Shown piece after piece: positions 4,423-57,600 of a DNA stretch of 64,000 nucleotides. Position numbers and translations under genes: made by a program. This DNA is from Sphyrna mokarran. Its lineage: Eukaryota. The stretch is from positions 54,808,001-54,872,000 of the forward strand of contig JAGIQG010000004.1 of NCBI GenBank assembly GCA_024679065.1, read 5' to 3'. Each line of letters opens with the position of its first letter. Within the stretch, counting starts at the first letter, position 1. Below the pieces are notes generated by a model. That model was not told where the DNA came from. It was given only the letters and a program-made list of their open reading frames with translations, and ran no database searches.

Positions 4423-5768
4423 ATAATAATAATCCGAAGAGGACAGGAGCGAAAACGCATCCCTGTTTAACGCCGTTTCTGATTGGGAATGGGTTGGACA
4501 GCTCACCACATATGTGGATGCGACCCTCCATGCCTTCATGAAACTGGCGTATAATTTTGCATAAATGTGGAGGGCAACCAAGTTTCTGTAGGAGTTTCCA
4601 TAAGCCTATCCAAGATGCCAGATTAGAGTCATCAGATTCAGGTGTCTTCTTACAAACCAGGACTGATGGTGGTCTTCTCAATCTCACCAGACTGAAGGCG
4701 AGAACAAAAGTAAGGGACCTAGTGTTACGAGAGCTTCAGTTTGCTGATGACTGTGCCCTAGTAGCGCATACTCTCGAAGATCTCCAAGCGATCACCAACC
4801 GCTTTGCCAGTGCAGCTAAAAACTTCGGATTAACAATTAATCTTAAAAAGACCGAGGTTCTGCACCAGCCAGTTCCTGGATCAAATCGTGAAGAACGATC
4901 TGTGCTCATCGATAACACAAGTCTTAATTCAGTAACCAACTTCTGTTACCTGGGCAGCATGATAACATCCTCCACCTCTTTGGACATGGAGATTGAATCG
5001 CGAATAAATAAAGCTTGCTTTGTCTTTGGACAGCTAAAAAGTCGTGTCTGGTCACAGAACATCAAGATGGCCACAAAGTGCGAAGTATACAGAGCCTTAG
5101 TCATGTCTGCACTGCTCTACGGTTGTGAGACATGGTGTCCATACCAAAGACATTTTCGACAGCTGGACCAACTTCAACAACGACAGTTACGCTCTCTGAT
5201 GAGAATTACATGGAAAGATAAAATAACTAATACTGAAGTTCTCTCCCGAGCTAAAATGCCAGCTGTCTCAACCCTGGTGATGTCTGCCCAATTGCGCTGG
5301 GCAGGACACGTAGTCAGAATGCAGGATGGAAGACTGCCCAAGGACATCATGTACGGCCAACTGTCTAGTGGCACCCGCAAACAAGGAGGTCAGCGGCTGC
5401 GATACAAAGACACTCTGAAAAGGAGCCTCAAAAAAGCTGACATCGACCCATCAACATGGGAAGAAAAGGCCCTAGACCGTGCACAGTGGCGGACCATCAC
5501 AAGAAAGAGCGTCGACGATATAGGAAAAAAGGACCGAGGAGCAGCACTAGAACGACATAGGAAACGCCACAGTGGAACTCCCGCTCCAACACCCACAGCA
5601 GATCTCGCCTGCCAAATATGCGGAAAGCAGTGCCTGTCAAGGATCGGTTTATACAACCACAGCAGAACACACACATCAAACTCCCAAAACAGAACTATCA
5701 GAAAATAAACGAAATGAAGGAAACCATCATCATCCCTTGGGATGGATAGCGATAGTATAGTATAGTAG
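4423..5768 (+). mobile_element. 5'-truncated RTE-clade (BovB-like) LINE with 5' inversion
   Basis: Open RT C-terminal half (LQFADD, FCYLGS, LRWAGHVVRM, terminal CQICGK..HSRTH), (ATAGT)n tail, TSD TACATGGGGAAA at 4411-4422 and 5769-5780; 4423-4610 encodes the preceding RT part on the minus strand. Confidence 0.95.
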
Positions 5769-18124: not shown

Positions 18125-18235
18125 GTTCTGGTTGTAGATGTCATTACCTCTGGATTTCTAGGTGTGTCATGGGCGGATTGGTATTTCTGGCGCTTATAAT
18201 CGTCACTGGGGTGAAATTGATTTCGAAGAATAAAG
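18125..18235 (+). CDS. Transmembrane exon with intramembrane Arg, putative activating IgSF receptor
   Basis: tttttacttgcag|(G)SGCRCHYLWISRCVMGGLVFLALIIVTGVKLISKNK|gtaacc; 111 nt, phase 1-1, like the TM exon of the inhibitory gene. Confidence 0.7.
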
Positions 18236-27357: not shown

Positions 27358-30300
27358 AAAGAACAAAGAACAACACAGCACGGGAAACAGGCCCTTCGGC
27401 TCAACGAGCCCACGCCGCCATTTTAACGTTCCCACTTCCACCCATGACCCTTGTCTATGTTTGTAGAAATCTGCATTGGAAACCAGACAATTGGGCAGAC
27501 AATTTAGGGACAATTTGTTTCACCAATCAGCCTAAGAGCACATGTTTGGAGTGTGGGACGAAACCGGAGCACCCGGAGAAAACCTACGCAAGCACGGGGA
27601 GAATGCGCAAACTCCAACAGATACCGGCCCAAATCCCTGTATCTGCATAGCAACAGTGATAGTCACTGAGCTGTCGTGTTGCCCATCAACTGGTCCATTT
27701 TAAGCATACACTTACGACGTGAAGCAATAGGCTAGTCGCGAAAAATCCAAGAGCAGCCTTCTCACGACTCATCGCGTGTATGCCCCTTGTTGGACAGAAG
27801 TACCTGTAGGATAAAAGAGAAATACATCAATAATATGCATAACTTATACAATTCCTAGGAACGTCCCGAGGTTCATGATCCTAATTATATCCCTCCATCC
27901 CTATTCCGCTCATGTGCCTATGTAAGTATCTCTTAAATTACTTCACCGTGTCTGCCTCCACCACCTTACTTGACGATGCATTCCATACTCCCAAACCCTC
28001 TGTGTGAAAAACCTCCCTCTAACATCCAAATTATATTTTGCCCCCCTCACGCTAAGCCCGTGGCCCCTCGTGATATTTGATTCCATCCTAGGAAAAAGCT
28101 TAATCCTGTTTACTCTATTTATACGCCTCATAATCTACACTTCTATTAGATCTCCTCTCAGTCTACGTCTTTCTAAAGAAAACAGCCCCAATTTGCCTAA
28201 CCTCTCCTCGTAACCGAGATCTTCCATACCAGGCAGCATCCTGGTAAACCTCTTCTGCAATCTCTCCAGGGTCTCCACGTCCTTCCGGTAGTAAGGCGAC
28301 CAGATCTGCACGCGGTATTCCAAAAGAGGTCTAACCAACGTTCTACACAACTACAACATTAAACGCCAGCTCTTGTACTGTATACCCTTTCCTATAAAGG
28401 CTAGCATACCATATGCTTTCTTCACAACTTTCTCCACTTGCTCTGCCACCTTCAGAGACTTGTGCACCTGCACCCCCAGATCCCTCTGCGTTTTTATACT
28501 CTTAATAGGTCTCCCCCTTATCATATATCTCCCCTCTACATTCTTTCTCCCGAAATGCGTCACCTCGCATTTATCAGGATTAAATTCCATCTGCCATACA
28601 TCTGCCCAATCTACCAGTCTACTTATGTCCTGCTGTATCGCCCGACACTGCTCCTCTCTATCCGCAAGTTCAACCATCTGTGTGTCATCTGCAAACTTGC
28701 TGATCACACCACTCACTCCCTCTTCCAAGTCATTTATATATAATAAAAATAGAAGAGGTCCCAGTACTGAGCCCTGCGGCACACCACTAGTCACCAATCT
28801 CCAGGTAGGGAAACACCCTTCCACTACAAAGAACAAAGAACAACACAGCACGGGAAACAGGCCCTTCGGCCCAACGAGCCCGCCCCGCCGTCCTAACGTC
28901 TTAATGACATATAGAGACCAATATAGAGACAATTTGTTACCCAATCAGCCTAAGAGCACATTTTTGGGATGTGGGAGGAAACCGGAGCACCCGGAGAAAA
29001 CCCACGCAACCACGGGGAGAACGCGCAAACTCACGCAGACACAGGCCCAAATCCATGTGTCTGCACAGCAACAGCGATAGTCTCTGAGCTGTCATGTTGC
29101 CCATCTGATGGTCCAGTTTAAGCATACACTAACGACATGAAGCAATAGGCCACTCCTGAAGTAACATCCAAGAGCAGCCCTCGCACGACCTGCCGAATGC
29201 ATGCGCCTTGTTGGTCAACAAGGTGGACCGAATAGCCTGTGGAAACAAATAAAGTATTTAAACAGTCATCCTATATCCCTCTATCTGCAGACCGCTCATG
29301 TGGCTGTCCAAGAGACCCTTAAACAACCCTAGCGTGCCTGTTCCCACCACCTTACTCGGCAGTGCATTCCACACCCCCACTACCCTTTGTGTGAAAAACT
29401 GCCCTCTAATATTCGTCTTATACATAGCCCCACTCACCCTAAGGCCGTGACCCCTCGTTCTATCCGAATCTAATGGTGGAAAAAGCTTACCACCATTTAC
29501 TCTATCTATACCCCTCATAATCTTATATACCTCGAATAGATCCCCTCTCAGCCGACGTCTTTCAAGGGAAAACAACCCCAGTGTGTTCAATCTTTCCTCG
29601 TAAGACAGCCCTTCCATGCCAGGCAGCATCCTGGTAAATTTCCTCTGCACTCTCTCCAAGGCCTCCACATCCTTCTGGTAGTACGGCGACCAGAACTGGA
29701 CGCAGTACTCCAAGTGAGGCCTAACCAACGTTCTATACACTTGTAACATCAGACTCCTACTCTTGTATTCTATACCCTTCCTATGAAGGCTAACATACCA
29801 TACGCTTTCTTTATCACTTTCTCCACCTGTACTGACACCTTCAGAGACTTGTGAACCTGCACCCCCAGGTCTCTCTGCGTCTCTATACTCCGGATAGTTT
29901 TACCTTTTATCATATAACTCCCCTCTACATTATTCCTGCCAAAATGCATCACCTCGCATTTATCCGGATTAAATTCCATTTGCCATCTATCTGCCCAGTC
30001 TACCAGCCTATCTATGTTCTGTTGTATTGCCTGGCACTGCTCCTCAGTCCCCGCCAATCCAAGCATCTTAGTGTCATCAGCAAATTTGCTGATCACACCA
30101 CCTACCCCCTCTTCCAAGTCATTTATATAAATTTATATAAATATAAATACTTCTCTCTGTCTGCTATTACCAAGCCAGTTATTTATCCATCTAGCTATCT
30201 ATCCTTGTATTCCATTAGCGTTGACCTTTTCAACTAACCTCCCATGAGAGACTTTGTCAAACGCTTTACTGAAATCCATATAGGCGACATCAACAGCTCG

Positions 30301-31010
30301 TCCTTCATCGACCGTTTTCGTCACCTCCTCAAAACATTCTACCAGATTCGTAGGGCACGATCTCCCCTTAACAAAGCCATGCTGCATATCCCTAATCTGA
30401 TCACCATGCTCTAAGTGCATATGCATCCTATGTCTAAGAATCCTCTCCAACAGCTTCCCTACCACTGACGTCAAATCCACAGGCCTACAATTTCTAGGGT
30501 TATCCCTACTACCCTTTTTGAGCAACGGTACAACATTTGCTATTTTCCAGTCCTCTGGGACCTCACATGTGTCCAAAGAAGAGACAAAGATTTGCGTCAG
30601 AAGCCCAGCAATTTCACTTGCGCCTCCCTAAGCACTTGGGATAAATGCCATCAGGCCCCGGAGATTTATCAGTTTAACTGCTACCTGAAGCTCTAACACT
30701 CCCTCCCTCGTAATAGATATTTCCCTCAATGGTCTCCAGCTCCCTCCAAGACAGTACCGGTCAACAAACACCTCTCCTTTGTGAATACTGACGCAAAGTA
30801 TTCATTCAGGATCTCCCCCTTCCCTCGGGTTCTAAGCACAGATCCCCTCCTCTGTCCTAAGAGGGCCGATTTTTGCTCTAACCACCCTTTTATTCCTAAC
30901 ATAGGCGTAAAAAGCCTTTGGATTTTCCTTAATCTTGTCCGCCAAAACCATTTCATGCCCCCCTTTTTTGCCCTTCTAACTCCCCGTTTGAGCTCCCTCC
31001 TACTCTCTCT
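27358..31010 (-). mobile_element. CR1 LINE copy A (27358-28827 + about 30148-31010) with SINE-containing 3' UTR
   Basis: Near-intact ORF2 pieces (SGVPQGSVLGPLLF, KFADDT, RLRGDLIEV). The RT frame broken at 28827 resumes at about 30148 after nested copy B. Confidence 0.9.
28828..30147 (-). mobile_element. CR1 LINE copy B, 5'-truncated, nested in copy A
   Basis: ORFs 29770-30117 and 29258-29749, same chimeric 3' UTR and (CTTTGTT)n tail. Confidence 0.9.
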
Positions 31011-35530: not shown

Positions 35531-37423
35531 TTAATTTAAAAGCAGGGACTTAAAATGAAAATCCCTCACCTGAGTCTTTACGAACGGGAATGTACTACCT
35601 CTCTTCAATGAAATTGGATGACAAGATGATGTAATGGATTTGCTTTTTTGCAAACCTCATCCTTCATCATTTCCATCTCCAAATTTATGATATAAAATGG
35701 GAGGAAAAGAATCAGCTTAACAAGTGCCCAGAATTTGTTTAAAGTTGGTATTTATGGATGATTTTGGACAACGTGCTGAAGCTATGACTTCTGAGTCACT
35801 GAGATCAGTGTTACGGTATTTTAGCATGTGGAAAAATGCAATGCATGTGGGAAATTTAAACTTAACTTTCCAAAATCTTGTGCAATCGTTAGCAAGAAAA
35901 GGACAGACAATGTATGCAGGAAGATGCCTTCAATCACGTAAAGGAATTAATTGAATAATTAAATGCCAATAGTCGGAAGAGTTACATTTTTCCGTTGTAA
36001 CAATAGTGCTGTTTGGAAAGGTACAGTGACACATTTCAAACAGGACATCCGTTGCACGTATGTGTCGCTATAATTATATATTGAAACTAGTGATGTAAAA
36101 TAACTGCTGCTATCAAATACTTGATACGTCCACAGTGTGTTGCAATGTTGCTACATTTAGAAACGACGTGAAATACGTCCACTGCTAAGTTCCAATCGTC
36201 AATATGTCTTGTCAATATTTAGCAACGTATAAGTGTAGCTCAAAATAGAAAATTACAAACACCCAACAAATAGTTTCCACGCTATCAGCTTATCCAGATA
36301 AACCGCCAACACAGTAATCTTTTACATACCGTGCACACAGGTGCGACCTTTTGGGCTAATTTAGCATCAAAATTATTCATACTACTTTGTTTCCAAATTG
36401 AGTCAACTATTGTTGTCAGGTAAGAAAATTAAATGTTAGGTAAACCAGACTATTGTGACAGTTTAACAATTGCCTATTTACTTGCATTTTTCATGTCCTT
36501 CCGGATAAATGTTTTGTCGTCAGCCTAACTAAACGGATCAAATATCAACGCATTAAAAAAAAACAATGAATATGACTTCTTCCTTGGAAGTATTTGATCC
36601 AAGACAGCAGAGAAGGAAGCTGCAGAAAATGTCGACTGTATGGAGGAAGAAAATGACAGTCTAGTACTATTGAAGAACGACGCTTGGATGAAGAACACAT
36701 GCTCTTTATTGCAAAATGAAATTCAATGCATACCCATAAAGGAGAACTTTGATTGCTCTGGGAAAGAATCAGGATGGGAATAATTGGGCAATGCTGTCAA
36801 ATTGCCAGCACGGATCAAACGGTCACCTTCTCAGATACAGGATTCCACAATTAGACACGATGTCATGTGAAAATAGATGTTTGTAATAGATGTTTGCAAA
36901 GAACAACTCTAACCTACTTTCAGTAAATTGATAGGGAAATCCAAGTATTCAGCTTCACCCGTTTTCTAACAGGAGTATCAGCTGAACTGGATGTAACGTG
37001 CTGGCACGTACTCAACGTAATAACGGGATGTATGAATCTACACGCGGATTCTTCTGTTATTGAACAAAGTGAACACTGATAGTTAATTTGTAAAAGATTC
37101 TAGAAAGTTGATTTTTTTTAAATTTTACTTTACTATACAGATAATTAGATACCACAGGACACAATATATCGTTGTAGCCGAAGGAACATATTTGTCATTA
37201 TTTTTAAAATATACTCCTTGAACAATGCTGCATAACAAGAAAGATTTTTTTTCCTAAAGCAACGAAAATAAACTTCTTAAAAAAATCGACAAAAAGTGAG
37301 TACCATGTACTGCCTTATCTGACAGACATCGTATCATACAGCAAAAACACTCCTGGTGCTTGTCCGGCAGAGAGACGCGATCAGTGTAGACATAGAAGTG
37401 AATTCTGCGTCGAAATTCAATTG

Positions 37424-37588
37424 CTAATTGATATTCGCCTCCGTATAGCTAGTCTCTTTTGCTCCATTTTGCTTCTCTCTCCGCAGTTGGGCATATTCAG
37501 TGCACCTTTCGTTAGCTTTGCCTTTGTCTGAGCTGGTCAACGCTACACTTGAGTATATCAGGTCATTGCCGACTTTCCTTTGTTGCGT
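37424..37588 (-). CDS. Exon 7, terminal exon with ITIM LIYSSV and ITSM-like TEYAQL
   Basis: Acceptor accttgcag, then TQQRKVGNDLIYSSVALTSSDKGKANERCTEYAQLRREKQNGAKETSYTEANIN-stop in phase 0. Confidence 0.88.
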   Translation of the reverse strand, partial: TQQRKVGNDLIYSSVALTSSDKGKANERCTEYAQLRREKQNGAKETSYTEANIN

Positions 37589-40500
37589 CTGCAAGGTCAA
37601 TGTTTAAAAATATTGTTTACTGGTTACATCGCAAGTCCCATGGTACGCTGTTCAAAAAGTTCATCAGAAGGACATGCAGATTATCTTATAGACAGCATAG
37701 GGGCAAAGTCAACAGAGATATATTTCCTGCTTTATCTCATGGGTGTTGATGTTACACTGGTGTATTTTGTTTCTCTGATCGGTTACTCGGCTCCACCTGA
37801 GATTACTCACCTCATTACGTTTATGCTTTGGAGTTTTGTTCAAATCTAATGCGGCATAATGCACATATTCACTCGCATTTTCCTGCTTGGACAAAATGGA
37901 AAATTTTTGTTACGTGGCTGGTTCATTGTGTTCATCAGTTTACACTAATTTTGGTCAAACATTGAGCGGATTAACCTGGGATCGAACAGACCTGTGCAAA
38001 ATATAATTAATTTACATTTACCTTAGTGCGAATATGAAGGCACTCGACACTTTACACTCCTATATCAAATGTTGAAACTCGCCAAGTTCACTCGACATAA
38101 CTGTTATATAAATGTTGAAACAGGCGGCAATTTCATTACATACAGGTTATCTCCGATCTGACTGCATAAATCAATTGAGGTAAACTTATTAACTGTATTT
38201 TCATCGAGATAAGCCGTTCTCCTTTCTAAACGTTTATCGTTGTTTGCCAATAAAGCAGCCGGTGGCAACTGAATTTCCAAATCCGATTGAAATGTGAAAT
38301 TTCACTGAGACAAAACAAGATTCGGAGATGCCAGCGTTGGACTGGGATAGGCGCAGTAAGAGGTCTCACAGCACCAGGTTAAAAATTCACCTGATGCAGG
38401 AGCAGCGCCCCGAAACTTCGTGATTCCAAAAAAAACCTTTTGAACTTTAACCTGGTATTGTGAGACCTCTTACTGAGACAAAACAATTAAATTTATTAAA
38501 CGGACTTAAACTGGGCTGATGTGATTATATTCACTTTTCATTATATCAATCTTCTCTGGTGTTTCAAAAAACTGCCTGTAAATGAATGAACTTACCAGTT
38601 CCTGTCTCCGATTCCCTCCTCTTACACGTTCATCTTTACCTGGAAATAAGTGAAATTGAGTGATACTGAAAGAAAAACTTTCTGAAGATGAGTCTTACGG
38701 ATCCGAAATGTTTACTCTGTGAGCCTCTGCATAGACGCTACTAGAAGTGTTGTCCAGGATTTTCTGATTTTCACCTTATTTTTCACGTCAGAGATTGCAT
38801 CACATCAGAGATGGTCAGAGAGAAAAAGCTCAAGAGGATTTTCAATTTCGCAATGTGCGGAAAATAATTGAAATCCTTAACAACAACAGGGTGCTTTAAA
38901 ATATTTCGCGGAAACTGTCGTGATATTTTACATTCTTCGAGAAGGCGGGCAAGTGCCGAACATCAACAATGGTAATATTGCGTGACTGAGCAGGCGCGAG
39001 GAGCCATCTGGTCGACTAATCTGGTCTACTGTTTCTTATGCAGCTCTGTGCACAACCGTTCCCGGACCATAGCCACAGTTAAATCTAATTGTGACTACAC
39101 CAAGTAGTAATTTGGAAACCAATTTTGTGTCAGAGTGTATTTCGTTCATCTGGTTCCAAAAGGAAATGCGTTTGGAAACATCTAGCTAATTACTTTCATC
39201 TTTATTATATCTCTTTTGTCCTAAAATATAATTTCGGCAATTAGTCCTTCCTCAAAACCATACGACTCGTTTCAACTTTAACTCCGAACTGTATTTTTTT
39301 CTGTTCTGTTCCCTGGAAACTGTCAGTAGTCCCAAAAGTATGTGCGAAAATCAAGTGTTACTTTACCTTCATTCTTTAGCATTTGTTTCCGCCTCCTAAT
39401 GACGATCGCAAGCACGAGGAACGACAATCCAACCAGTGCACACACTGGAATCGAATAGTAAATATTTTCTGCAAGATTAATTGCAACATGAGGTAATAGT
39501 GCGTATTAAATTAAAAGAAAATAGGTTCCAAGACAGTTTATTATTTAAACCATAGTGATGGTTGCACTGACCCCGCAGAGTTGAACAGAAATAGAACGTT
39601 CGAATACAAAAGCTTGTTTGCAGCTAAATATCTGCAGTATCTTCTTTCTCGAATGTTTGATGCATTATTGTTGAGTCTACGAAGACTATAAGACTGGAGT
39701 CACATGAAGGCCAGGCCGGGAAAGGGTGACTGAACACCTTTCCTCAAAGTCATCAGAGAACCAGGTGCGTTTATTTGCGTCAGAATTATAGTTTCATGAC
39801 ACATTACTAAAACGAATGTTTAGTTCAGTATTTATTCGTTGGTTTTAAATGTCATGATGTGATTTGAAGCGATATCCTTACAGCTTTAGCCTGCACGTCT
39901 TGAGTAATAGTGGCATTAAAATCTCGCCACCATCTTCCCTTAGTAGCATGTCATTGGAGATGATTGGACAACATCCAAATGGTTCACCCATAATTGCCGC
40001 CTATCAAGCTACTCCGTTTAAGGGCAATTAGGGATAAATAATAAATGATGGCCTAGCCAGCGACGTTCACATTCCATGGAAGAGTTTACTTTAAAAAATG
40101 CAGTGAAGCGGACATACAGCGTTTTTACCGGTTAGAGTTTAAATGAGATTTATGAAACTGCTTTCAGTTACAACCATCATGTTTTTAAGTAGGATAAGAA
40201 GCTGGTGAGTTTGTTATTCTAAAGCTCTGCACAGAACGTAACCGAACGTGTAACAATATCGAAATCTCACGGCAATCAGTCCTTGCGCAAACAACGGGCC
40301 TGCCGGTCATAACAAAAGTTTTCAAGCAAGAGGAGTTCGCAACGATCAAGTTTAAAGCATTTTCAACAAAATAAACAGAAAGTGAAAAAGACTAATAATA
40401 TTCAAGTTAAGAAATATTACATTAGAAAATATGAACGAATGCTTAATATTGTTCCATTAAAAATAGAGGAATTTGAAAGCAAATACGTTTGGATTTTTGT

Positions 40501-43500
40501 TCTCATTTATGGGATGTGAGCTTTGCAGACGAAGCCAACATTGCCCATTCTCAATTGCTCCTGAACGGAATGGCCTGCTAGAAAGTTGCAGAGGGCAGTT
40601 AAGAACCAATCACTTCGCTCTGGCTCTGAAGTCACATGTAAACCCGGCTGAATAAGGACGGCAGATTTCCTTCCCTGAAGGACATTGGTGAACCAGAGTG
40701 GCTTTTACCACAATCGATCACAGTCTCATGGTCACTATTACTAAGATTAGCCTGATACCCCATAGCTATTAATTGAATTATGTTTCCAGAAGCTGCTCTT
40801 GTGGGATGCGAATCCATGTCCTTAGATTGATTACTTGCCTGAATGCATGGCTGACTATATAAATCGATTTGAAGACATTGCATTAAATTCAGTGTAAAGG
40901 CACTTTAATGTTTCTGTTGATACTTCTCGTGAATTTTCGTGATTATTAATATGCATAAAACTTACGAAAAATTTCACTATGAATTCTACTGTAGGTGGCT
41001 TTCGTTTTACAATAGTTTTTCCCCTACCTTGGTTAGATTTAAGAATTGTGTAGGCCACAATAGCCGGAGTCTTGAGGGTGACATGAGATACCAGACATGA
41101 AATATTGACGTCCCTCGGTACAGGCTGATTCTCAACCAAAGTGCTGGAAACTTCATACAGTCCATCTCTGTTCTGCACTTTACTGGTGTGTATTCCTGAT
41201 GAAGTTTCGACGCCATTTTTATACCAAGTGAGGGTGTAATTTTCCGGATAAAATGCAGCTGTTTCACAGACAAGGATCAGAGGCACAGTCGAATTCCCTT
41301 CAGTTGTCCTGGAGAAAAGATTTAGTGGGGTTGGGGCCACTGCGGAGCAGAAAATGAACAAAGTACTGTGCACTGTTTGGAAAAATTAAATATACTTATG
41401 GCGTTCGGTTAATATTCTTACTCACTGGTAATTCCTATTCGTTGCATTTGAATATTACACACAAGATCAGTGTAGATCTAATACATATAAAGACCGACAT
41501 TTGATCAACTCCAATAATTTTTGAATTCCGTGTGGGATACGGTGAGGTAATTTGCTAATCAACGTTTAAAGCGGCTAGAGAATTAAATATTGATGAGACC
41601 GTCATCTCGCTGAGTTCTTACGTTGTTTTGTATGCAATGACATGACAGAGAGTGACGAATAATAATCATATTCTTGATGATAAAATGAGCATTGTAATGC
41701 TTCTTTAAAGCCACAGCTTGGTATTTGATTAAACAAACAACTTTCAGTTGACTCTGCCGAAGTTTCGCCAAGATGTAGAGATGCCGGCGTTGGACTGGGG
41801 TAAACACAGTAAGAAGTCTGACAACATCAGTTTTAAATCCAACCGATTTATTTAATAGTAAACTCGCAAGCTTTCGGTTTTATGGCCTTCGTCAGGCGAA
41901 TGAGGTGTTCTGTTCTCCAATAGCACACATATCAGCGCAGACAGTTTACGATCACTGATTAGAATGCGAATCTTTACACCTAACGTACACCTAGCGGTCA
42001 CGGGCATTCGCCCTCCGACCTTCGGGTAAACGTTCTTCAAGGGGGTCTTCACGACACACTACAGCATAGAGCCGCTGAGCAGAGACTGATAGCCAGGTTC
42101 CGCACACATGAGGACGGTCTTAACGGGGATCTTGGCATCATGTCACACTATCTGTAACCTCCATGACTTGCCTGGGTTAGCAAAAAAATCTCACTTACTG
42201 GAGATAATACACATCTCTCTAACCTGTGCTCAGTGCTCCTTCACTCACATTGTTAGCCACTTTAAGACTTGAATGGCAGGTTAGGTGTAAAGATTCGCAT
42301 TCTAATCAGTAATCTGTAAACTGACTGTGCTGATATGTGTGCTATTGGAGAACAGAACACCTCATTTACCTGACGAAGGCTACAAAGGCCGAAAGCTTGC
42401 GAGTTTACTACCAAATAAATCGGTTGGATTTAAAACTGCTGTTGTCAGACTTCTTACGAAATTTCGCCAACACAGCCTCTCTGTTCAATTGCAGGCAAAA
42501 TATTGCAGACGCTGGAATCTGAAACAGCCTCTCTGTGTTGTTTATTTATTTGAAAATTAGTGAACTGGCAGCCATGTATGTCTGAAACTCCAATCTGTTG
42601 AGTAAATCGATTTGGTCCACAGTTAAACATTGAGTATTTGAATATGTGCCGTATCGTTCTTTGAAATTTACTTTAAGGAATACTTGTATTCATGGACTAT
42701 TAAAACTAAGCCAAAAGCTTTGTGTATATATCTTGGGAATAGCCCAGTAGTATAAAAGATTTTCAGTTAATTTTACTTTAGGAATTCATTCTGAATGTCA
42801 CCAATGTAAATCTGGTGCAGAAATTCACTTCATTGTTGTGATGTGTTTGATAAATATTACTAATATATTCAGTACTCTCCGAGTGGCATTGCAGGTATAA
42901 TTAGCATTTTTAATGTAGAGGACACGAATAAACAACTAACTTATCGTGAAATATGTTCATAGGCATGATTTCCCCGACAAAAAGTATGCATATCCCCGAT
43001 TGTTGCGTTTAATATATTATGGCGATCTCCCTCGCCATGTATTTCAATCTTACCATGTACAGTTAGCTGCGATCCAGTTCCATTTCCTTGACCTTCTCCC
43101 TGACAGATCACCGTACAGTAATGGGTCCCAGCGTCTTGCAATATCACATTTGTTAAGCGAAAGAAACGACTCACTTTATTTTCCATACCAAACTTTTTTC
43201 TCTTGTCTGAGCTTGAATGCAGGAATTCGTTCTCACCATGTTTCCACCACAATACCCGTACCCAGGATTGGGATGGAAAAATGGGGAATATGCAGTAGGA
43301 GGTGAAGTTTCCCCCTCTGGATACAATCATTTCTACTGGCGTTTGGGACACAGTGAACGAAGTATGGTCCGTATCTGTCAGAAAGATAGACAAACATACG
43401 TTAATTGCATTAGATACAACATAAATGTAGAAAAGTGAAGAGAGGAATTAAGGTTTTTTAAATTGATATGAAAACTATTTCCTTGGAAGTTATTAATTAA

Positions 43501-43584
43501 AGTAACATTGCAAGTAAAAAAACTAGTGCCTGTAAGAATAATTCCTCGGAGGATCAAGCATAGAAATACTATGATCGTTGTCAT
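37424..43584 (-). CDS. Ig-superfamily inhibitory receptor, L-V(J)-C1-TM-cytoplasmic (2 ITIM + ITSM-like); SIRP/NITR/NKp30-like architecture; 7 exons, 356 aa
   Basis: Exons 43584-43530, 43374-43054, 41339-41028, 39468-39367, 38639-38596, 37882-37811 and 37588-37424 sum to 1071 nt. They join into one open frame with consistent phases (1,1,1,1,0,0), AG acceptors and GT donors (GC for intron 1), ending at TAG. Confidence 0.9.
37811..37882 (-). CDS. Exon 6, cytoplasmic exon with ITIM VHYAAL
   Basis: ENASEYVHYAALDLNKTPKHKRNE; tandem AAGCAG acceptor, donor GAG|gtgagt. Confidence 0.88.
38319..38471. mobile_element. Short palindromic Penelope-derived element in intron 5
   Basis: Inverted arms cagtaagaggtctcaca..ccaggttaaa / tttaacctgg..tgtgagacctcttactg; TSD ACTGAGACAAAACAA. 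Confidence 0.75.
38596..38639 (-). CDS. Exon 5, short cytoplasmic exon GKDERVRGGNRRQEL
   Basis: Acceptor tatttccag, donor CTG|gtaagt; 44 nt converts phase 1 to phase 0 as required by the next exon. Confidence 0.8.
39367..39468 (-). CDS. Exon 4, transmembrane segment (uncharged) plus RRRK stop-transfer
   Basis: ENIYYSIPVCALVGLSFLVLAIVIRRRKQMLKNE; acceptor tcttgcag, donor G|gtaaag, phase 1-1. Confidence 0.9.
41028..41339 (-). CDS. Exon 3, C1-set Ig domain
   Basis: LVCETAAFYPENYTLTWYKNG...DGLYEVSSTL...ISCLVSHVTL (C1 motifs FYP, WxxNG, CxVxH); acceptor ctccgcag, donor G|gtaggg. Confidence 0.95.
41772..42456 (+). mobile_element. Penelope-like element with inverted pLTRs in the V-C1 intron
   Basis: About 180-bp inverted arms around a GIY-YIG C-terminal remnant; hammerhead cores in both arms; TSD CGAAGTTTCGCCAA/CGAAATTTCGCCAA. 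Confidence 0.88.
41862..41901 (-). ncRNA. Minimal type I hammerhead ribozyme motif (Penelope pLTR)
   Basis: AUUCGC-CUGACGA-AGGCCAUAAAACC-GAAA-GC-UU-GCGAGU: stem I pairs 6/6 (one G-U), conserved CUGANGA/GAAA core, palindromic AGCU stem III. Confidence 0.65.
43054..43374 (-). CDS. Exon 2, V-set Ig domain with built-in J-like G strand
   Basis: FTVSQTP...GGNFTSYC...VLWWK...LTNVILQDAGTHYC...GNGTGSQLTVH; acceptor tttctgacag, donor G|gtaaga. Confidence 0.95.
43530..43584 (-). CDS. Exon 1, signal peptide MTTIIVFLCLILRGIILT
   Basis: ATG followed by a hydrophobic 18-mer. Phase-1 end at ACAG|gcacta matches the phase-1 start of the V exon about 155 nt downstream. The donor is a non-canonical GC. Confidence 0.7.
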
Positions 43585-43670
43585 AATTTGCAAGGCTTCC
43601 AACTCTTGCCTCTGTAGTAACTGCGAGTTTACAATTTTTAAAAATAACTTGCTGTTAATTTTCCTTCAGA

Positions 43671-43710
43671 GACGTCGTAGTGACGTTTAACATCCGGAAA
43701 GTGAGGTTTC
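43671..43710 (-). promoter_or_regulatory. Candidate proximal promoter of the inhibitory receptor gene
   Basis: About 90-125 nt upstream of the ATG: CRE half-sites (GACGTC, TGACGT), an Ets core CCGGAA and an overlapping IRF-like GAAAGTGA. Short motif matches only. Confidence 0.35.
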
Positions 43711-44891
43711 AAAAACTACGCTTCAATTTTTAAGTGAGATTTTCTAATTTTTGCAACTAGTTAATTTCCTGGAATTACATGTTTTGCAAGCAGCACAAAG
43801 CAAGGAGAATTTAGATTTTCTAAAACTGAATTTATGAACATTCTCCGATTTGGTTTGTTTCCTGACAGGTAATGGTCTTGTAATTACGATGGCCAGCAGA
43901 GAGATTGTGAACGAAAATGAATTGAAAATACGCACCATGGTCATATTCAGACTACTGTAATCACAAGTGCTGGAGAGACATGATCTGGAAGCTGGCAACG
44001 TGTGCATTGTCTTCAGTGAGAACCAGAAGGTTGGGAATATGTTGACTTTTTCCAAGGAGACCACAGTCGAATCTGAGTTTTTCGGAAAGGAGTGATGACA
44101 ATGGTATCCATGGGCATAATGTCGTCAGACAAGCCACCTGTTACCATTTGGCTATGATGGGGACTGAAAAATTGGGCGACAAGTTGTTCATTCGCATGTA
44201 GACTATGGCTCAGAAAATGCTTCATAGATAATACGTGTTTAGAGCGTATTTGGGGAAGAACACGAGAGGTTTCTGAGTTACAGCGTTTCCCGTTATGGTA
44301 AGATGTGGAGTAGAAATTTGGTTCGCTAGATAAATGGAAAGAAGGAAGCATTAGAAATCATTGGCTGGAAGATAATTTGATGACAAAGGATTCCTTGAAC
44401 GTCCTGTAATATTCGCTAAGCGAAGAAGGTTGAGAGATTTGAGCAGAATGTTTTGGGTTTGAGGATGGGTAGGGAGGGTGAATGTGCAGGGTGGTGGTTT
44501 GTTTGTGATGAGCGTGGCAGTCGGAGTGTAGGGAAAGAAATAATTATTTATCGTTGCTCTCCAGCACAGTTATCCAGTAATGAGCAGCTGTGGTTGTGAA
44601 CGGTGAGACTTTAGGAAGCTTCTCTTGATTTAATCAGATGAGGCTCTGGATGGTTAGACCTGCCAATCCTTTTGGAATTGAGAATGTGAAGGTTAGTGCT
44701 ATACCATTATTACAGTAAACATTCGAGACCGTGGGACATGTATTTTGACTATGTGCGCTTAGTCTTTATTTCCTTTCTTTTCTCAATAGATTTCTAAATG
44801 TTTCATTCAAGGAATGCACTGTTTCACATCTGTATCCTAGAAAGACATTTTGCTACAAAGCCGTATTACCTGTTCGGCGTCACAGAAAATT

Positions 44892-54669: not shown

Positions 54670-57600
54670 GTAATCATAGAATCATGGAACAATGAAGAGG
54701 CCCTGCCGCCCATTGAACCTGCATCGCCATATTAGAATCACCTGAACTCCCGCCTAATCTCATCAGCTGGCACTTGGTCCATAGTCCTGGATGTTATGAC
54801 GTGCCAATCGCTCATCCAGGTGCACTTTAAAGTATGTGAAGCAACACTCCCAGGAGTGCATACAGGCCGTTACCAACCTCTGGGTAAAAAAGTCTTCCCT
54901 CACATGTCCCCTTAAATCTCCTGTCCCTTACCTTGAACCTATGTCTTCTTGTGACTGACTCTTCAACTAACGGGAACAGCTGCTCCCCACCCACTCTGTC
55001 CATGTCCTTCATTATCCTGTACAAGTCGCCCCTCAGTCTTCTCTGCTCCAACGAAAACAATCCAAGCCTATCCATCCTCCCTTCATAGCGTTAAATGTTT
55101 CATTTCAGGCAGCATCCTGGAGAATCTCGTCTGCACCCCCTCGAGTGCAATCAACTCTTCCTATAATATGGTGACCAGAACTGCACACAATACTCTAGCT
55201 GGTGTCTCACCAAATTTCTATAGAAAGATTACTTTCCTGCTTTTGTAATCTATGCTTTGATTGATAAAGGCAAGTGTCCCATATGCATTTTCACTATTTT
55301 ACTAATATGCCCTTCCGGCTCCAGGGATCTGTGGACTAACATGCCAAAGTCCCTTCGTTCCACGGAATTTCCTAGCTTCGACCATTCATTGAATGCTTTC
55401 TTATCAAATTACTCTTTCTAACGTGTATCCCCTCACACTTTCCAGGGTTAAATTCCATTTGCCACTTATCCGCCCATTTGATAACTCCATTTATACGTTC
55501 TTTTAGGTAGGTAGCCCCGCTGCTAACCACCTGGCAAATCTTTGTGTCATTTGCAAACTTATTAATGCTTCCCCACGAAGTCATCTATGCCATTTCCATA
55601 AAAGACAAGTAATATAGGGCCCAACACGGATCCCTGTGGTTGCAAATCGACTGTGGCTTCCAGTCACTAAGAAGTCAGTAAGAATTTAGCAACACCAATT
55701 TATAATCCAACCGATTTATTTGATAGTAAAAAAGCGAGCTTTCGACTCCTGTGTCTTCCTCAGGCAAATGCAGTGTTCTGGTTTGCAATAGCACACATCA
55801 GCATAGACAGTCAGAGATTGCTGATTAGAATGCGAATCCTTACATCTAACCTGCTATTGAAGTGTTAAAGTGGCGAACAATGTATGTGAAGGGAATCCTG
55901 AGCATTGTTGGAGAATTGTGTGTTTTCTCCAGACAGCACAGTAAGTGAGGTTTTTTGCTAACCCAGGCAAGTTACGAGGGTTACAGATAGTGTGTCATGA
56001 AGCCAAGATCCCTGTTAAGTACCTAATACGTTGCAAGAAAGGATGTCCCGAAGCATGGTATATTGGGGAGACCATGCAGACACAACGACAGCGGATGAAT
56101 GAGCATCGCTAAGCAATCACCAGGCAAAACAGTTCCCTTCCTGTGGGCGAACACTTCAGCAGTCATGGGCATTCGGCCTCCGACCTGCGGGTAAACGTTC
56201 TTCAAGGGGGCTTTCGTGATACATGACAGCGCAGAGTCGCTGAGCAGAGACTGATAGCCAAGCTCCGCACACATGAGGACGGTCTTAACAGGGATCTTGG
56301 CTTCATGACACACTATCTGTAACCCCCGTAACTTGCCTGGGTTAGCAAAAAACCTCACTTACTGTGCTGTCTGGAGAAAACACACAATTCTCCAACAATG
56401 CTCAGGATTCCCTTCACACACATTGTTCGCCACTTTAACACTTGAATAGCAGGTTAGATGTAAGGATTCGCATTCTAATCAGCAATCTCTGACTGTCTGT
56501 GCTGATGTGTGCTATTGCAGACCAGAACACTGCATTTGCCTGAAGAAGACACAGAGAGTCGAAAGCTCGCTTTTTTACTATCAAATAAATCGGTTGGATT
56601 ATAAATTGGTGTTGCTAAATTCTTACTGAGTTCTTACCACCCCAATCCAACGCCGGCATCTGTACATCCAGTCACTAAAGCAGCCTCCTGCCATCTGTCT
56701 CTCATACAATAGAACGGATTCTGAATCCACTTTATCAAATTGTCCTTTATCCCATGTGTATTTACCTTCTTTACAAATCTCCGATATGGAACATTGTCAA
56801 AGATTTTGCTGAAATCCATTTTAACCATGTCTACAGCACTACCTGCGTTTACATACCTGGTAACCATCTCAAAAAATTCAATCAAATTTGTTAGCAATGA
56901 TCTCCAGTTCCCTTCGCCCCGCACCCCATCGCACGCCCGGATAAAGCAGCCATGACTATTCAAGTGGACATGGATGCTCTCCTTCAGAATTTTTCTAAAG
57001 GTTTCCCCTGTCAATGACGTAAAACTCACTGGCAGGTTGTTATTTGCATTATCTCAGCAACCTTTTTTAAATAGCGGAACAACATTCGCTGTTCTCCAGT
57101 CATCTGACAACCCCGCGTAGCCAGAAAGGAATTGAAAATTTGTTTCAGATCTGCAATCTCCTCCCTTGTCTCCCAGAGCAGCCTAGGGCTCAATCCATCG
57201 GGAGGGAACTGGAGATTTATTCTCTTATAAGGCTGCCAATACTTCCAATACCTTGCCCTTCCCGATGTAAATTTTCTCAAGAACCTCAAAGTCCCTTTCC
57301 CTGAATTCCATACCATCGTCCTCATTGTCTTGGGTGACAACGGATTCATTCAATCTCTCCCAATCTCCTCTGGTGCCACTTATGCATCGCCCTCTTGGTC
57401 CCTAATGGGCCCCACTTTTCCCTCATTAACATCTTGATATTATTAGAGAATATCTTGAGATTATCTCTTCTTTTACCAGACTGAAATTTCCCATATCCCC
57501 TCTATGCTTTCCTAATTTCTTTCTTAAACTCCATCTTGCACTTCCTATACCTCACTAATATTTCCACTGATTTGTTCCCCTTCTACTTTTTAAAAAGGGT

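What the first reader, a model, noticed from the sequence alone, without database searches (positions are those of the whole stretch)
37424..43584. Intact non-rearranging V(J)-C1 receptor: antigen-receptor-like ectodomain on a multi-ITIM inhibitory tail
Seen: one exon encodes a V domain with a germline J-like strand (GNGTGSQLTV), followed by a single C1 domain, an uncharged TM and tyrosine motifs VHYAAL, LIYSSV, TEYAQL and degenerate TSYTEA. I found no RSS or separate J segments. Known: V+C1 is the layout of TCR and Ig light chains; C1 domains are largely restricted to Ig, TCR, MHC, tapasin, SIRP and some B7 proteins; SIRP-alpha has VJ-C1-C1 with alternating ITIM/ITSM tyrosines; NKp30 and NITRs have joined VJ domains. 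Inference: this is a cartilaginous-fish inhibitory NK/myeloid receptor with the structure proposed for the pre-RAG antigen-receptor precursor, probably annotated only as a generic '-like' gene.
Basis: partly seen in the sequence, partly recalled or inferred. Interest (0 to 1): 0.85.

Follow-up and report, generated by a model that had tools for sequence, protein, structure and literature searches.

The report
Shark V-C1 inhibitory immune receptor gene
This is an intact shark gene for a cell-surface receptor built like one antibody or T-cell-receptor chain but never rearranged, with a tail that should switch cells off; it is one member of a large, unnamed family found across sharks, rays and chimaeras.

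Summary
On the minus strand, 43584-37424, seven open exons with canonical splice sites encode leader, a V domain ending in a germline J-like strand, one C1-set domain, an uncharged TM and three tail exons carrying VHYAAL, LIYSSV, TEYAQL and TSYTEA. Pfam, AlphaFold2 and fold searches confirm both domains. No RSS flanks the V exon.

It is not a lone oddity. The V exon finds 59 protein clusters at E<=1e-10. Every strong hit whose name I saw is chondrichthyan, auto-named SIRP-alpha-like, tapasin-related-like, CD276, class II beta-like and so on. The nearest is Mustelus asterias XP_078066559 (V 68%, C1 84%). The family mixes ITIM-tailed and charged-TM members, so it looks like a paired receptor family.

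Outside the family the V is nearest NKp30-type V domains. The C1 is nearest SIRP C1 among solved chains. The tail recalls SIRP-alpha.

Six relevant papers, including those on shark NCR3 and PRARP, were not held. First-stage notes of this scan describe similar VJ-C1 genes on other pieces of this genome.

The parts
43524..43584 (-). Leader exon: ATG at 43584, hydrophobic signal peptide MTTIIVFLCLILRGIIL.. The donor is either A|GT after 43524 or G|GC after 43530.
   Evidence: Sequence. tblastn of Heptranchias P0144 residues 1-28 gives 50% identity at 43584-43501. Homologue leaders read MSASMVFLCLTLRGII... Both candidate donors are weak, so the exact junction is not settled.
43054..43374 (-). V exon with fused J-like G strand (GNGTGSQLTV). 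Phase-1 borders and a split leader. Cys27, Trp42 and Cys86, plus an extra Cys90 in the CDR3-like loop.
   Evidence: G98, G100, L103 and V105 are each kept in 90% or more of 66 rows. AF2 pLDDT 93.1. Fold matches are VNAR, NKp30, Ig-beta and TCR V.
41028..41339 (-). Single C1-set constant-domain exon, phase 1 at both ends.
   Evidence: Pfam C1-set E 2.6e-11. PDB sequence hits SIRP-alpha E 2.6e-13, SIRP-gamma and UrIg2. AF2 pLDDT 87.7. Foldseek best matches are MHC class II beta2 and Ig CL, TMq about 0.8, rmsd 1.5-2 A. 84% identical to Mustelus P0001.
39367..39468 (-). Stalk, uncharged transmembrane helix with a Cys at its outer edge, and RRRK stop-transfer.
   Evidence: 93.5% identity over 31 aa to P0001. 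The family consensus keeps the Cys at the start of the TM.
38596..38639 (-). Short cytoplasmic exon cy1 (KDERVRGGNRRQEL), phase 1 to 0.
   Evidence: Sequence and splice sites. Equivalent stretches G-YDGRLTGGNRSEEL in P0001 and ..GPNRSEEL in P0143.
37811..37882 (-). Cytoplasmic exon cy2 with the ITIM VHYAAL. Phase 0 at both ends, so it could be skipped in frame.
   Evidence: 52-63% identical to the IVHYAALDLSK.. exon of P0143, P0144, P0145, P0148, P0157 and P0158. It is absent from the Mustelus model P0001.
37424..37588 (-). Last coding exon cy3: ITIM LIYSSV, ITSM-like TEYAQL, degenerate TSYTEA, and TAG at 37426-37424.
   Evidence: 84% identity over 51 aa to P0001. The motif order is shared with P0144, P0148 and P0154.
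36705..36710 (-). Only AATAAA or ATTAAA signal in the 2.4 kb after the stop, 714 nt downstream. A possible polyadenylation signal.
   Evidence: Position only, no transcript data.

Best explanation
An intact gene for a type I membrane receptor of the immunoglobulin superfamily. It has a germline-joined V(J) domain, one C1-set domain, an uncharged transmembrane helix and a tail with two ITIMs and one ITSM-like motif. It is the inhibitory-type member of one orthologous group within a multigene family found in sharks, rays and chimaeras. That family also holds members with an Arg or Lys in the TM and short tails, which is the activating type.

Shown: gene structure, domain types, family membership, conservation of the tyrosine motifs, and the mix of the two tail types.

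Inferred: the V domain binds a cell-surface or pathogen ligand. Src-family kinases then phosphorylate the ITIM/ITSM tyrosines. These recruit SHP-1/SHP-2-type phosphatases through their SH2 domains and damp activation. Arg-TM relatives would signal through ITAM adaptors. This is the scheme of SIRP-alpha/beta and other paired receptors.
For: - Exons, phases and motifs.
- C1-set above Pfam's cut-off.
- Confident models with V-type and C1-type folds.
- V exon search: 133 clusters at E<=1e-3 and 59 at <=1e-10.
- All 20 of 20 proteins that I picked from the V-exon hits for name look-ups are chondrichthyan.
- 22 of 34, 50 of 52 and 23 of 25 hits are named chondrichthyan proteins.
- Nearest relative is Mustelus P0001: V 68%, C1 84%, TM 88%, cy3 81%.
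- The window's C1 pairs with P0001 at 99% SH-aLRT, inside a 15-row group (support 91) that holds sharks and rays.
- Every exon junction agrees with P0001, P0143 or P0144.
- Of 80 stored chondrichthyan V-C1 proteins, 33 have an uncharged TM plus an ITIM/ITSM tail, and 15 have a charged TM without an ITIM.
- No RSS by the V exon.
Against: - No transcript evidence: no RNA run was listed, so read laying could not be used.
- The homologues are mostly automatic gene models, and the nearest one lacks exon cy2.
- The V exon alone is below Pfam's V-set cut-off.
- The leader donor is weak.
- ITIM function, phosphatase recruitment, cell type and ligand are untested.
- My TM and tail classes come from a crude hydropathy and regex script. 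19 of 80 models had no TM and 11 had neither a charge nor a motif.
Confidence: 0.72

Rival explanations
1. It belongs to the shark NCR3 (NKp30) gene family already described by Kinlein et al. 2021 (Immunogenetics 73:333). In that case it is a known family seen in a new species.
For: - A family V profile built without the turtle row scores turtle NCR3-like P0125 at 55.1 bits, against 28.7 for a mammalian SIRP-gamma-like V.
- P0125 itself matches human NKp30 chains at E 6.4e-10.
- The window V is 33% identical to P0125, pairwise E 4e-14.
- NKp30 3noi_A is Foldseek rank 8 with TMq 0.79. 6yjp_A reaches Z 13.9, tied with the top rows.
- The GNGT sequon in the J-like strand is shared with P0125, P0107 and P0129.
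Against: - NKp30 as known has no C domain and no ITIM tail.
- Two papers from the same group call NCR3 a VJ-domain gene and present UrIg as the VJ-C1 gene of the shark MHC.
- No hit or 74 carries an NCR3 or NKp30 receptor name or comes from nurse shark.
- The 2021 paper was not held, so its content could not be checked.
Confidence: 0.2
2. It is the cartilaginous-fish orthologue or co-orthologue of SIRP-alpha, with one C1 domain instead of two.
For: - Best solved-chain sequence matches of the C1 exon are SIRP-alpha (E 2.6e-13; domain 3 gives 30.5 bits, domain 2 gives 20.2) and SIRP-gamma.
- A family V-C1 profile aligns through the V-to-C1 junction of SIRP-alpha.
- NCBI's pipeline names many members SIRP-alpha-like or SIRP-beta-like.
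- The tail alternates xxYAxL(DL) and TEYAxL motifs, as I recall for SIRP-alpha.
- The pairing with charged-TM members resembles SIRP-alpha/beta.
Against: - There is one C1 exon, and no relic of a second between the C1 and TM exons.
- The V domain scores only 28.7 bits to a mammalian SIRP-gamma-like V, against 55-63 bits for NKp30-type and multi-V proteins.
- Only one SIRP-named non-chondrichthyan protein (P0124) was seen, and only 30 of the 133 V hits were looked up by name.
- C1 domains of Ig heavy chains and UrIg2 score nearly as well.
- Synteny was not testable.
Confidence: 0.15
3. It is a B7-family ligand (B7-H6, PD-L1 or CD276 type V-C protein) and not a receptor.
For: - The single V exon's best PDB sequence hit is PD-L1 (E 1.1e-3, residues 5-91).
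- The C1 exon also touches CD80-like C2-set_2 at its cut-off (21 bits).
- Some family members are auto-named NCR3LG1-like, CD276 homologue or PD-L1-like.
Against: - The PD-L1 match stops before the J-like strand, which matches antigen-receptor, NKp30 and amphioxus VJ domains instead.
- C1-set scores 44 bits against 21 for C2-set_2.
- The top C1 fold matches are MHC class II beta2 and Ig CL, not B7 proteins.
- A tail of several ITIM/ITSM motifs paired with charged-TM relatives is a receptor pattern.
Confidence: 0.06
4. It is an unexpressed or recently dead copy in a decaying cluster.
For: - The window holds relics of relatives. One is an ITIM tail exon at 4269-4087, followed by a cy3-like stretch with a stop at 3944-3792.
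- Another is an Arg-TM exon at 18142-18234 with no V or C1 exon found for it in the window.
- The leader donor is weak.
- No RNA run was listed.
Against: - All seven exons are open.
- Canonical Cys and Trp residues and the J motif are kept.
- The other five donors and all six acceptors are good.
- C1, TM and tail are 81-93% identical to the Mustelus protein.
Confidence: 0.1

Closest known systems
SIRP-alpha / SIRP-beta (signal-regulatory proteins)
   Same: V domain with a J-like strand followed by C1-set domain(s). Type I membrane protein. Tail with several ITIM/ITSM-type tyrosines, and paired with charged-TM relatives. The C1 exon's best solved-chain matches are SIRP-alpha and SIRP-gamma.
   Different: One C1 domain, not two. 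The V domain is only distantly like a SIRP V (28.7 bits). Orthology, CD47 binding and synteny were not tested. The tail resemblance rests on my recall of the SIRP-alpha tail, not on a call.
NKp30 (NCR3) and NKp30-like V genes of turtles and coelacanth
   Same: Non-rearranging V domain with a fused J-like strand that carries a GNGT sequon. Compact fold with almost no C'-C'' region. These are the best-scoring named non-chondrichthyan V domains in my set.
   Different: NKp30 has no C domain. As I recall, it has a charged TM residue and a short tail without ITIMs. This gene has a C1 domain, an uncharged TM and an ITIM tail.
PRARP (Fu et al. 2019, chicken non-rearranging VJ-C genes)
   Same: As I recall the abstract: germline VJ domain, one C domain, TM and a signalling tail, proposed as relics of the antigen-receptor precursor. 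PMC10751288 cites PRARP as a VJ gene in the MHC.
   Different: No PRARP sequence was available in any tool and the paper was not held. Kinship is therefore untested. Of the 30 hits that I looked up by name, none carries that name.
UrIg / UrIg2 (shark non-rearranging antibody-like genes)
   Same: Elasmobranch genes with a single-exon VJ, a split leader and C1-type domains. UrIg2 is the third best solved-chain match of the C1 exon (E 2.7e-12 summed over three domains).
   Different: UrIg2 has nine or more C domains, and speaks of UrIg's N-terminal C domains in the plural. UrIg is expressed mainly in liver and UrIg2 in gill and liver. Neither appeared among the named V hits. This gene has one C1 and an ITIM tail.
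TCR chains and Ig light chains
   Same: V-J-C1 layout, phase-1 domain exons, and the G-x-G-x-x-L-x-V J motif. A V profile aligns through the J region of TCR alpha/beta, IgNAR and Ig light-chain V domains.
   Different: V and J are one exon and no RSS is present. Asn, within an N-G-T sequon, replaces the Phe/Trp before G-x-G. The TM has no charged residues. The tail is long and carries ITIMs.

Membership tests
Chondrichthyan V(J)-C1 paired-receptor family (unnamed; RefSeq 'SIRP-alpha-like', 'tapasin-related-like' and other names) | V domain of the family type, with the WWKxGE and GNGTGSxLxV signatures | tested here: met
   E 2.9e-40 to P0001. G98, G100, L103 and V105 are each kept in 90% or more of 66 rows.
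Chondrichthyan V(J)-C1 paired-receptor family (unnamed; RefSeq 'SIRP-alpha-like', 'tapasin-related-like' and other names) | One C1-set domain directly after the V domain | tested here: met
   81 stored proteins have a complete V followed by C1. The window's C1 pairs with P0001 at 99% SH-aLRT.
Chondrichthyan V(J)-C1 paired-receptor family (unnamed; RefSeq 'SIRP-alpha-like', 'tapasin-related-like' and other names) | TM followed by either an ITIM/ITSM tail or a charged TM with a short tail | tested here: met
   The window gene has an uncharged TM plus VHYAAL, LIYSSV and TEYAQL. In the family, 33 of 80 are ITIM type and 15 of 80 charged-TM type.
SIRP family | V domain followed by two C1-set domains | tested here: not met
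   One C1 exon only. No second C1-like ORF between 41028 and 39468.
SIRP family | Sequence kinship of V and C1 with SIRPs above other IgSF families | tested here: inconclusive
   C1: SIRP-alpha is top among solved chains, but Ig and UrIg2 are close. V: 28.7 bits to a SIRP-gamma-like V, against 55-63 bits for NKp30-type and multi-V proteins. Only one SIRP-named protein from outside the cartilaginous fishes, the rodent SIRP-gamma-like P0124, was available as a stored sequence.
SIRP family | Conserved synteny with SIRPA, and CD47 binding | not testable with these tools
Binding needs an experiment.
NKp30 (NCR3) | Single VJ-type Ig domain with no C domain | tested here: not met
   A C1 exon follows the V exon.
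NKp30 (NCR3) | V domain kinship with NKp30 | tested here: inconclusive
   33% identity to turtle NCR3-like P0125 and 55.1 bits from the family profile. NKp30 ties with the top structural matches. No phylogeny with curated shark NCR3 was possible.
NKp30 (NCR3) | Charged TM residue for adaptor pairing, and MHC class III location | tested here: not met
   The TM of this gene is uncharged. Location was not testable. That these two features define NKp30 is recalled, not from a call.
Rearranging antigen receptors (TCR, IgL) | Separate V and J segments flanked by RSS | tested here: not met
   V and J are one open exon. One weak RSS-like site lies in a distant intron, and shuffles average 0.1.
PRARP | Sequence kinship with chicken PRARP-A/B | not testable with these tools
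   No PRARP sequence or paper was available.
B7 family | B7-type V domain without a canonical J motif, plus a CD80-like C domain | tested here: not met
   The J motif is present. C1-set scores 44 bits against 21 for C2-set_2. Fold matches are MHC class II beta2 and Ig CL. That B7 V domains lack the J motif is recalled, not from a call.

The most novel reading that the evidence does not exclude
The family is the surviving V(J)-C1 form of the NKp30 lineage. Under this reading, cartilaginous fishes keep, as a large paired activating/inhibitory family, a non-rearranging receptor that joins an NKp30-type VJ domain to an antigen-receptor/SIRP-type C1 domain and a SIRP-type ITIM tail. Tetrapod NKp30 (V only) and SIRP (V-C1-C1) would then be trimmed or extended descendants of the same VJ-C1 stock that also gave the RAG-invaded antigen-receptor gene. 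The expanded shark B7-H6-like genes would be its natural candidate ligands.
Probability: 0.22. Interest if true: 0.78.

Novelty: new member of a known kind. Interest (0 to 1): 0.58.

Why it matters
Work on the origin of antibodies and T-cell receptors looks for germline-joined VJ exons attached to C1 domains. The two papers I could read name UrIg and UrIg2 as the shark examples, and NCR3 as a VJ-only gene.

This locus shows that sharks, rays and chimaeras also carry a large family of membrane VJ-C1 receptors with activating and inhibitory tails. Annotation pipelines label it with a dozen unrelated '-like' names.

If the family is truly undescribed, three things follow:
- It adds a second, much larger class of non-rearranging VJ-C1 genes to that debate.
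- It gives a candidate NK or myeloid paired-receptor system in the oldest jawed vertebrates.
- It links NKp30-type V domains to C1 domains.

If the unread papers already cover it, this locus is an ordinary new member of that family.

Tried and rejected
Transcript evidence. The look-up of sequencing runs listed no RNA run for 37300-43700. Read laying therefore had no run to use and was not called.

Contig lengths suggest that, within each species with several members listed, most or all members lie on one chromosome. That is not a synteny test.

Solved-structure profile searches. The profile of A1 turned out to span V, C1 and more (313 positions). It mainly showed collinearity with Ig heavy chains, SIRP-alpha and UrIg2, not kinship. 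The V-only profile A2 was swamped by multi-Ig proteins such as titin, Robo and contactin. Neither ranks NKp30 against SIRP.

A bias I corrected. My first family HMMs included the turtle protein P0107, which inflated the turtle NCR3-like scores to 67-71 bits. I rebuilt them without it and use only the rebuilt values.

Weak leads. The Atlas search gave only generic V-set clusters, the first being 'putative antigen receptor' at 0.96. The wide structural search gave a tie at Z about 14 among NCAM Ig1, IgNAR V, Ig-beta, NKp30 and TCR V. That supports the fold, not a family.

Phylogeny. No tree with curated SIRP, TCR, IgL, UrIg, PRARP or shark NCR3 references was built, because no tool gave me those sequences as stored proteins and I did not type any from memory. 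The only tree is of family C1 domains (quick search, 103 columns, many open forks).

Literature. Searches found no paper in the held library that describes this family. That is not proof that none exists. Six likely sources were not held:
- Kinlein 2021 (PMC8273117)
- Fu 2019
- Ohta 2019 (PMC6761025)
- Flajnik 2012 (PMC3709836)
- Flajnik 2023 (PMC10530332)
- Ohta and Flajnik 2015 (PMC4594805)
What I say about those six is recalled or taken from citations in other papers. Supplementary files were not opened. The supplements of PMC12227049 and PMC10751288 (gene tables, maps) may bear on whether these genes were already catalogued.
Of PMC12227049 I saw the outline, section 7 and passages. Of PMC10751288 I saw passages only. 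Of PMC3964593, PMC12272517 and PMC10450919 I saw reference-list passages only.

Rejected readings. A rearranging V gene is ruled out by the fused VJ exon and the lack of an RSS. A secreted UrIg-type antibody is ruled out by the single C1, the TM and the ITIM tail. A tapasin or MHC class II beta relative, as some automatic names suggest, is ruled out by the V-C1 layout without a peptide-binding or tapasin N-terminal domain.

Full report
THE OBSERVATION

The minus strand between 43584 and 37424 carries seven open exons:
- leader 43584-43524
- V 43374-43054
- C1 41339-41028
- TM 39468-39367
- cy1 38639-38596
- cy2 37882-37811
- cy3 37588-37424, which includes the TAG

All six introns begin with GT and end with AG. 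Their phases are 1,1,1,1,0,0, the usual pattern for Ig-domain exons.

- The V exon has Cys27, Trp42 and Cys86 and ends in GNGTGSQLTV.
- The C1 exon reads LVCETAAFYPENYTLTWYKNG ... DGLYEVSS ... ISCLVSH.
- The TM has no charged residue.
- The tail carries VHYAAL, LIYSSV, TEYAQL and TSYTEA.

The finding's two coordinates are the stop and the start codon.

One junction is unsure. The leader donor is either A|GT at 43524/43523 or G|GC at 43530/43529, and both are weak. The GC choice gives a leader of the same length as in the Heptranchias and Heterodontus proteins.

DOMAINS

- Pfam places the C1 exon in C1-set at E 2.6e-11, 44.1 bits against a cut-off of 21.
- The V exon scores as V-set at E 2.5e-4, 21.6 bits, below the cut-off of 26.
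- AlphaFold2 on each exon with a family alignment gives confident models: V pLDDT 93.1 and C1 pLDDT 87.7.
- Foldseek matches the C1 model to MHC class II beta2 and Ig light-chain constant domains, with TMq about 0.8 and rmsd 1.5-2 A. It is therefore a true C1-set domain.
- The V model has almost no C'-C'' region.
- Foldseek matches the V model to shark IgNAR V domains, NKp30 (3noi_A, rank 8, TMq 0.79), PD-L1, Ig-beta and TCR or Ig V domains.
- The wide structural search gives a tie at Z about 14 among NCAM Ig1, IgNAR V, Ig-beta, NKp30 (Z 13.9, 101 residues aligned, rmsd 2.5) and TCR V-beta.

NOT REARRANGING

V and J are one open exon. A scan for heptamer/nonamer pairs with 12 or 23 (plus or minus 1) spacers in 37000-44500 found one weak site. 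It lies at 37930, in the intron before cy2. Shuffled sequence gives 0.1 on average and at most 1.

The window holds no other V or C1 exon by tblastn at E<=10, by tblastn with nine family proteins, or by a motif scan.

THE FAMILY

An HMMER search of the V exon against 1.84 billion cluster representatives gave 133 hits at E<=1e-3. Of these, 59 were at <=1e-10 and 2 at <=1e-30.

I picked 20 proteins from those hits for name look-ups, and all 20 are chondrichthyan. They come from sharks (Mustelus, Scyliorhinus, Heterodontus, Heptranchias, Chiloscyllium, Cetorhinus), rays (Hypanus, Hemitrygon, Mobula) and the chimaera Callorhinchus.

Their names are automatic and inconsistent: SIRP-alpha-like, SIRP-beta-1-like, tapasin-related-like, NCR3 ligand 1-like, Ig lambda-like, 'immunoglobulin superfamily member' and 'uncharacterized'.

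Three word-indexed searches agree:
- With P0001, 22 of 34 hits are named chondrichthyan proteins. One is unnamed, ten are turtle or lizard multi-V proteins and one is from a whitefish.
- With a 16-row family profile, 50 of 52 hits are chondrichthyan. The other two are weak invertebrate hits.
- With a profile of V-only members, 23 of 25 hits are chondrichthyan.

These searches score only candidates that share short words with the query, and the last two were capped at 8000 candidates. They cannot exclude distant bony-vertebrate kin.

The window's own protein did not appear in any list, so I take this genome's gene models to be absent from the collection.

NEAREST RELATIVES AND SUPPORT FOR THE EXONS

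Identity of the window's exons to three homologues:

| Protein | V | C1 | TM | cy2 | cy3 |
|---|---|---|---|---|---|
| Mustelus asterias XP_078066559 (P0001) | 68% | 84% | 88% (93.5% over 31 aa by tblastn) | absent | 81-84% |
| Heterodontus P0143 | 59% | 69% | 58% | 54% | 52% |
| Heptranchias P0144 | 57% | 64% | 42% | 63% | 40% |

The two more distant proteins have the same layout, a very similar leader (MSASMVFLCLTLRGII..) and the cy2 exon.

Every junction of my model falls where these proteins run on without a break.

P0001 lacks cy2. That exon is phase 0 at both ends and could be skipped in frame. P0001 also starts in an upstream stretch that matches window 43938-43786, and it has no signal peptide. 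This looks like a model artefact or a 5' exon.

In a maximum-likelihood tree of 82 C1 domains (quick search, 103 columns, many open forks), the window pairs with P0001 at 99% SH-aLRT. The pair sits in a 15-row group (support 91) with Heptranchias, Heterodontus, Scyliorhinus, Stegostoma and three ray genera. That group holds both ITIM-tailed proteins (P0001, P0143, P0144, P0145, P0148, P0149) and Arg-TM proteins (P0002, P0004 and its kin).

PAIRED TAILS

I took the 81 stored proteins with a complete V followed by a C1, set aside the turtle protein P0107, and classed the remaining 80 with a hydropathy and regex script:

| Class | Count of 80 |
|---|---|
| Uncharged TM plus at least one ITIM or ITSM | 33 |
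| Charged TM residue, no ITIM | 15 |
| Charged TM residue plus ITIM | 2 |
| Uncharged TM, no motif | 11 |
| No TM in the model | 19 |

The script is crude. For P0150, for example, it missed the Arg and counted a Lys at the edge of the TM.

The order of tyrosine motifs is shared by the ITIM-tailed members that I aligned: xxYAxLDL, sometimes TVYAQ, then LTYAxL, TEYAxL, and a last YxEA. I chose those rows because they had tails.

WHAT IT IS CLOSEST TO OUTSIDE THE FAMILY

V domain. A family profile built from the window's V exon and 80 chondrichthyan rows gave these best per-domain scores:

| Protein | Bits |
|---|---|
| P0097 (unnamed multi-V protein with an ITIM tail) | 63.0 |
| P0039 (unnamed multi-V protein with an ITIM tail) | 60.9 |
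| P0129 (coelacanth) | 59.7 |
| P0030 (turtle multi-V protein) | 56.2 |
| P0125 (turtle 'NCR3-like') | 55.1 |
| P0124 (rodent SIRP-gamma-like V) | 28.7 |

- P0125 matches human NKp30 chains at E 6.4e-10.
- P0125 is 33% identical to the window V over 109 residues, pairwise E 4e-14.
- The stored set holds only proteins that my own searches brought in. This ranking is therefore not a phylogeny.

J-like strand.
- In the single-sequence PDB search, the only listed match that covers the J-like strand without most of the rest of the domain is amphioxus IgVJ-C2, while PD-L1 matches residues 5-91 only.
- G98 is invariant in 28 rows.
- G98, G100, L103 and V105 are each kept in 90% or more of 66 rows.
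- The residue before G-x-G is Asn within an N-G-T sequon. Antigen receptors have Phe or Trp at that position, which is recalled knowledge.
- The same GNGT occurs in P0125, P0107 and P0129.

C1 domain. The best solved-chain matches are SIRP-alpha (E 2.6e-13; domain 3 gives 30.5 bits, domain 2 gives 20.2), SIRP-gamma (6.3e-13), UrIg2 (2.7e-12 over three domains) and Ig heavy chains.

Tail. The alternation of xxYAxL and TEYAxL resembles what I recall of SIRP-alpha. No tool held a SIRP-alpha tail to test this.

HOW IT MOST LIKELY WORKS

Shown: the anatomy and the family context.

Inferred from established knowledge of ITIM receptors (SIRP-alpha, KIR, LILR):
- Ligand binding by the V domain clusters the receptor.
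- Src-family kinases phosphorylate the ITIM/ITSM tyrosines.
- SHP-1/SHP-2-type phosphatases dock on them and damp nearby activating signals.
- Arg-TM relatives pair with ITAM adaptors.

The V domain is 68% identical to its Mustelus counterpart and the C1 is 84%. That fits faster change at the ligand-binding end, but I could not compute dN/dS.

The cell type and the ligand are unknown. B7-H6-like proteins are a guess from the NKp30-type V. CD47 is a guess from the SIRP-type C1 and tail.

COMPARISON WITH THE LITERATURE

PMC12227049 (outline, section 7 and passages read) and PMC10751288 (passages read) present UrIg and UrIg2 as the non-rearranging VJ-C1 genes of elasmobranchs. They treat NCR3 as an MHC-linked VJ-domain gene, and PMC10751288 cites PRARP as another VJ gene. 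Neither passage mentions a membrane VJ-C1-ITIM family.

Eight full-text searches found no paper on such a family.

Six papers that could settle the matter were not held, and supplements were closed. I therefore cannot say that the family is undescribed.

First-stage notes of this scan describe similar VJ-C1 genes on other pieces of this genome, and more V, C1 and TM exons just beyond the window's end. Those notes are unchecked.

VERDICT

The structure, the host group and the generic annotation are right. The function and the expression are inferred. The V domain is NKp30-like and not clearly TCR- or Ig-like.
- The locus is one member of a large family with a RefSeq near-orthologue, so I rate it a new member of a known kind (non-rearranging V(J)-C1 paired immunoreceptors).
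- Interest is moderate, and would be higher if the family proves unpublished and its V domain proves to be of the NKp30 lineage.

Noticed in passing
window 4269-4087 and 3944-3792, minus strand: A second family-type tail. One exon reads ..EIMHYAVLDLSKTRKIPRRNHKDKKTVYA (62% identical to P0144 over 29 aa). A cy3-like stretch with an in-frame stop follows it. No V, C1 or TM exon was found for it, and a LINE reverse-transcriptase ORF (4557-5708) lies beside it. It looks like a relic of a relative.
   Followed up: partly
window 18142-18234, plus strand: A TM exon with an Arg (HYLWISRCVMGGLVFLALIIV..), 90% identical to the TM of Mustelus P0150, an activating-type family member. No V or C1 exon for it was found anywhere in the window. 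This is the subject of another first-stage note.
   Followed up: partly
window 41809-41949 and 42316-42457 (intron between the V and C1 exons): Two adjacent inverted-repeat pairs, 69 and 71 nt, 96% and 92% complementary. Together they make about 140-nt arms of two head-to-head repeat copies. Their outer ends, at 41769-41837, overlap one copy of a 69-nt direct repeat whose other copy is at 38316-38384 (80% identical). Probably SINE copies.
   Followed up: no
window 43938-43786, minus strand: A stretch upstream of the ATG is 67% identical in translation to the first 51 residues of the Mustelus model P0001, which has no signal peptide. It is either a conserved 5' exon or promoter region, or the source of a mis-started RefSeq model.
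   Followed up: no
protein P0107 (Pelusios castaneus, UniProt A0A8C8RR30), not in the window: A turtle model joins an NKp30-like V domain to a C1-like stretch (FYP..W..YTCQVGHPSL) that lacks the first Cys. It scores 38.4 bits with the family C1 profile. It could be a fused gene model, or a hint that NKp30-type V plus C1 exists outside cartilaginous fishes.
   Followed up: partly
proteins P0010, P0019, P0048, P0057, P0103, P0109: V-only members or isoforms of the family, in which the V domain is joined directly to the stalk, TM and ITIM tail. P0057 and P0103 are named isoform X2, and P0048 is grouped with isoform X4 by UniRef. This suggests that the C1 exon can be skipped.
   Followed up: no
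window 4557-5708, 28351-30576, 56634-57349: Reverse-transcriptase-like ORFs of LINE elements on both strands. The window is rich in repeats and shows no other clear gene.
   Followed up: no
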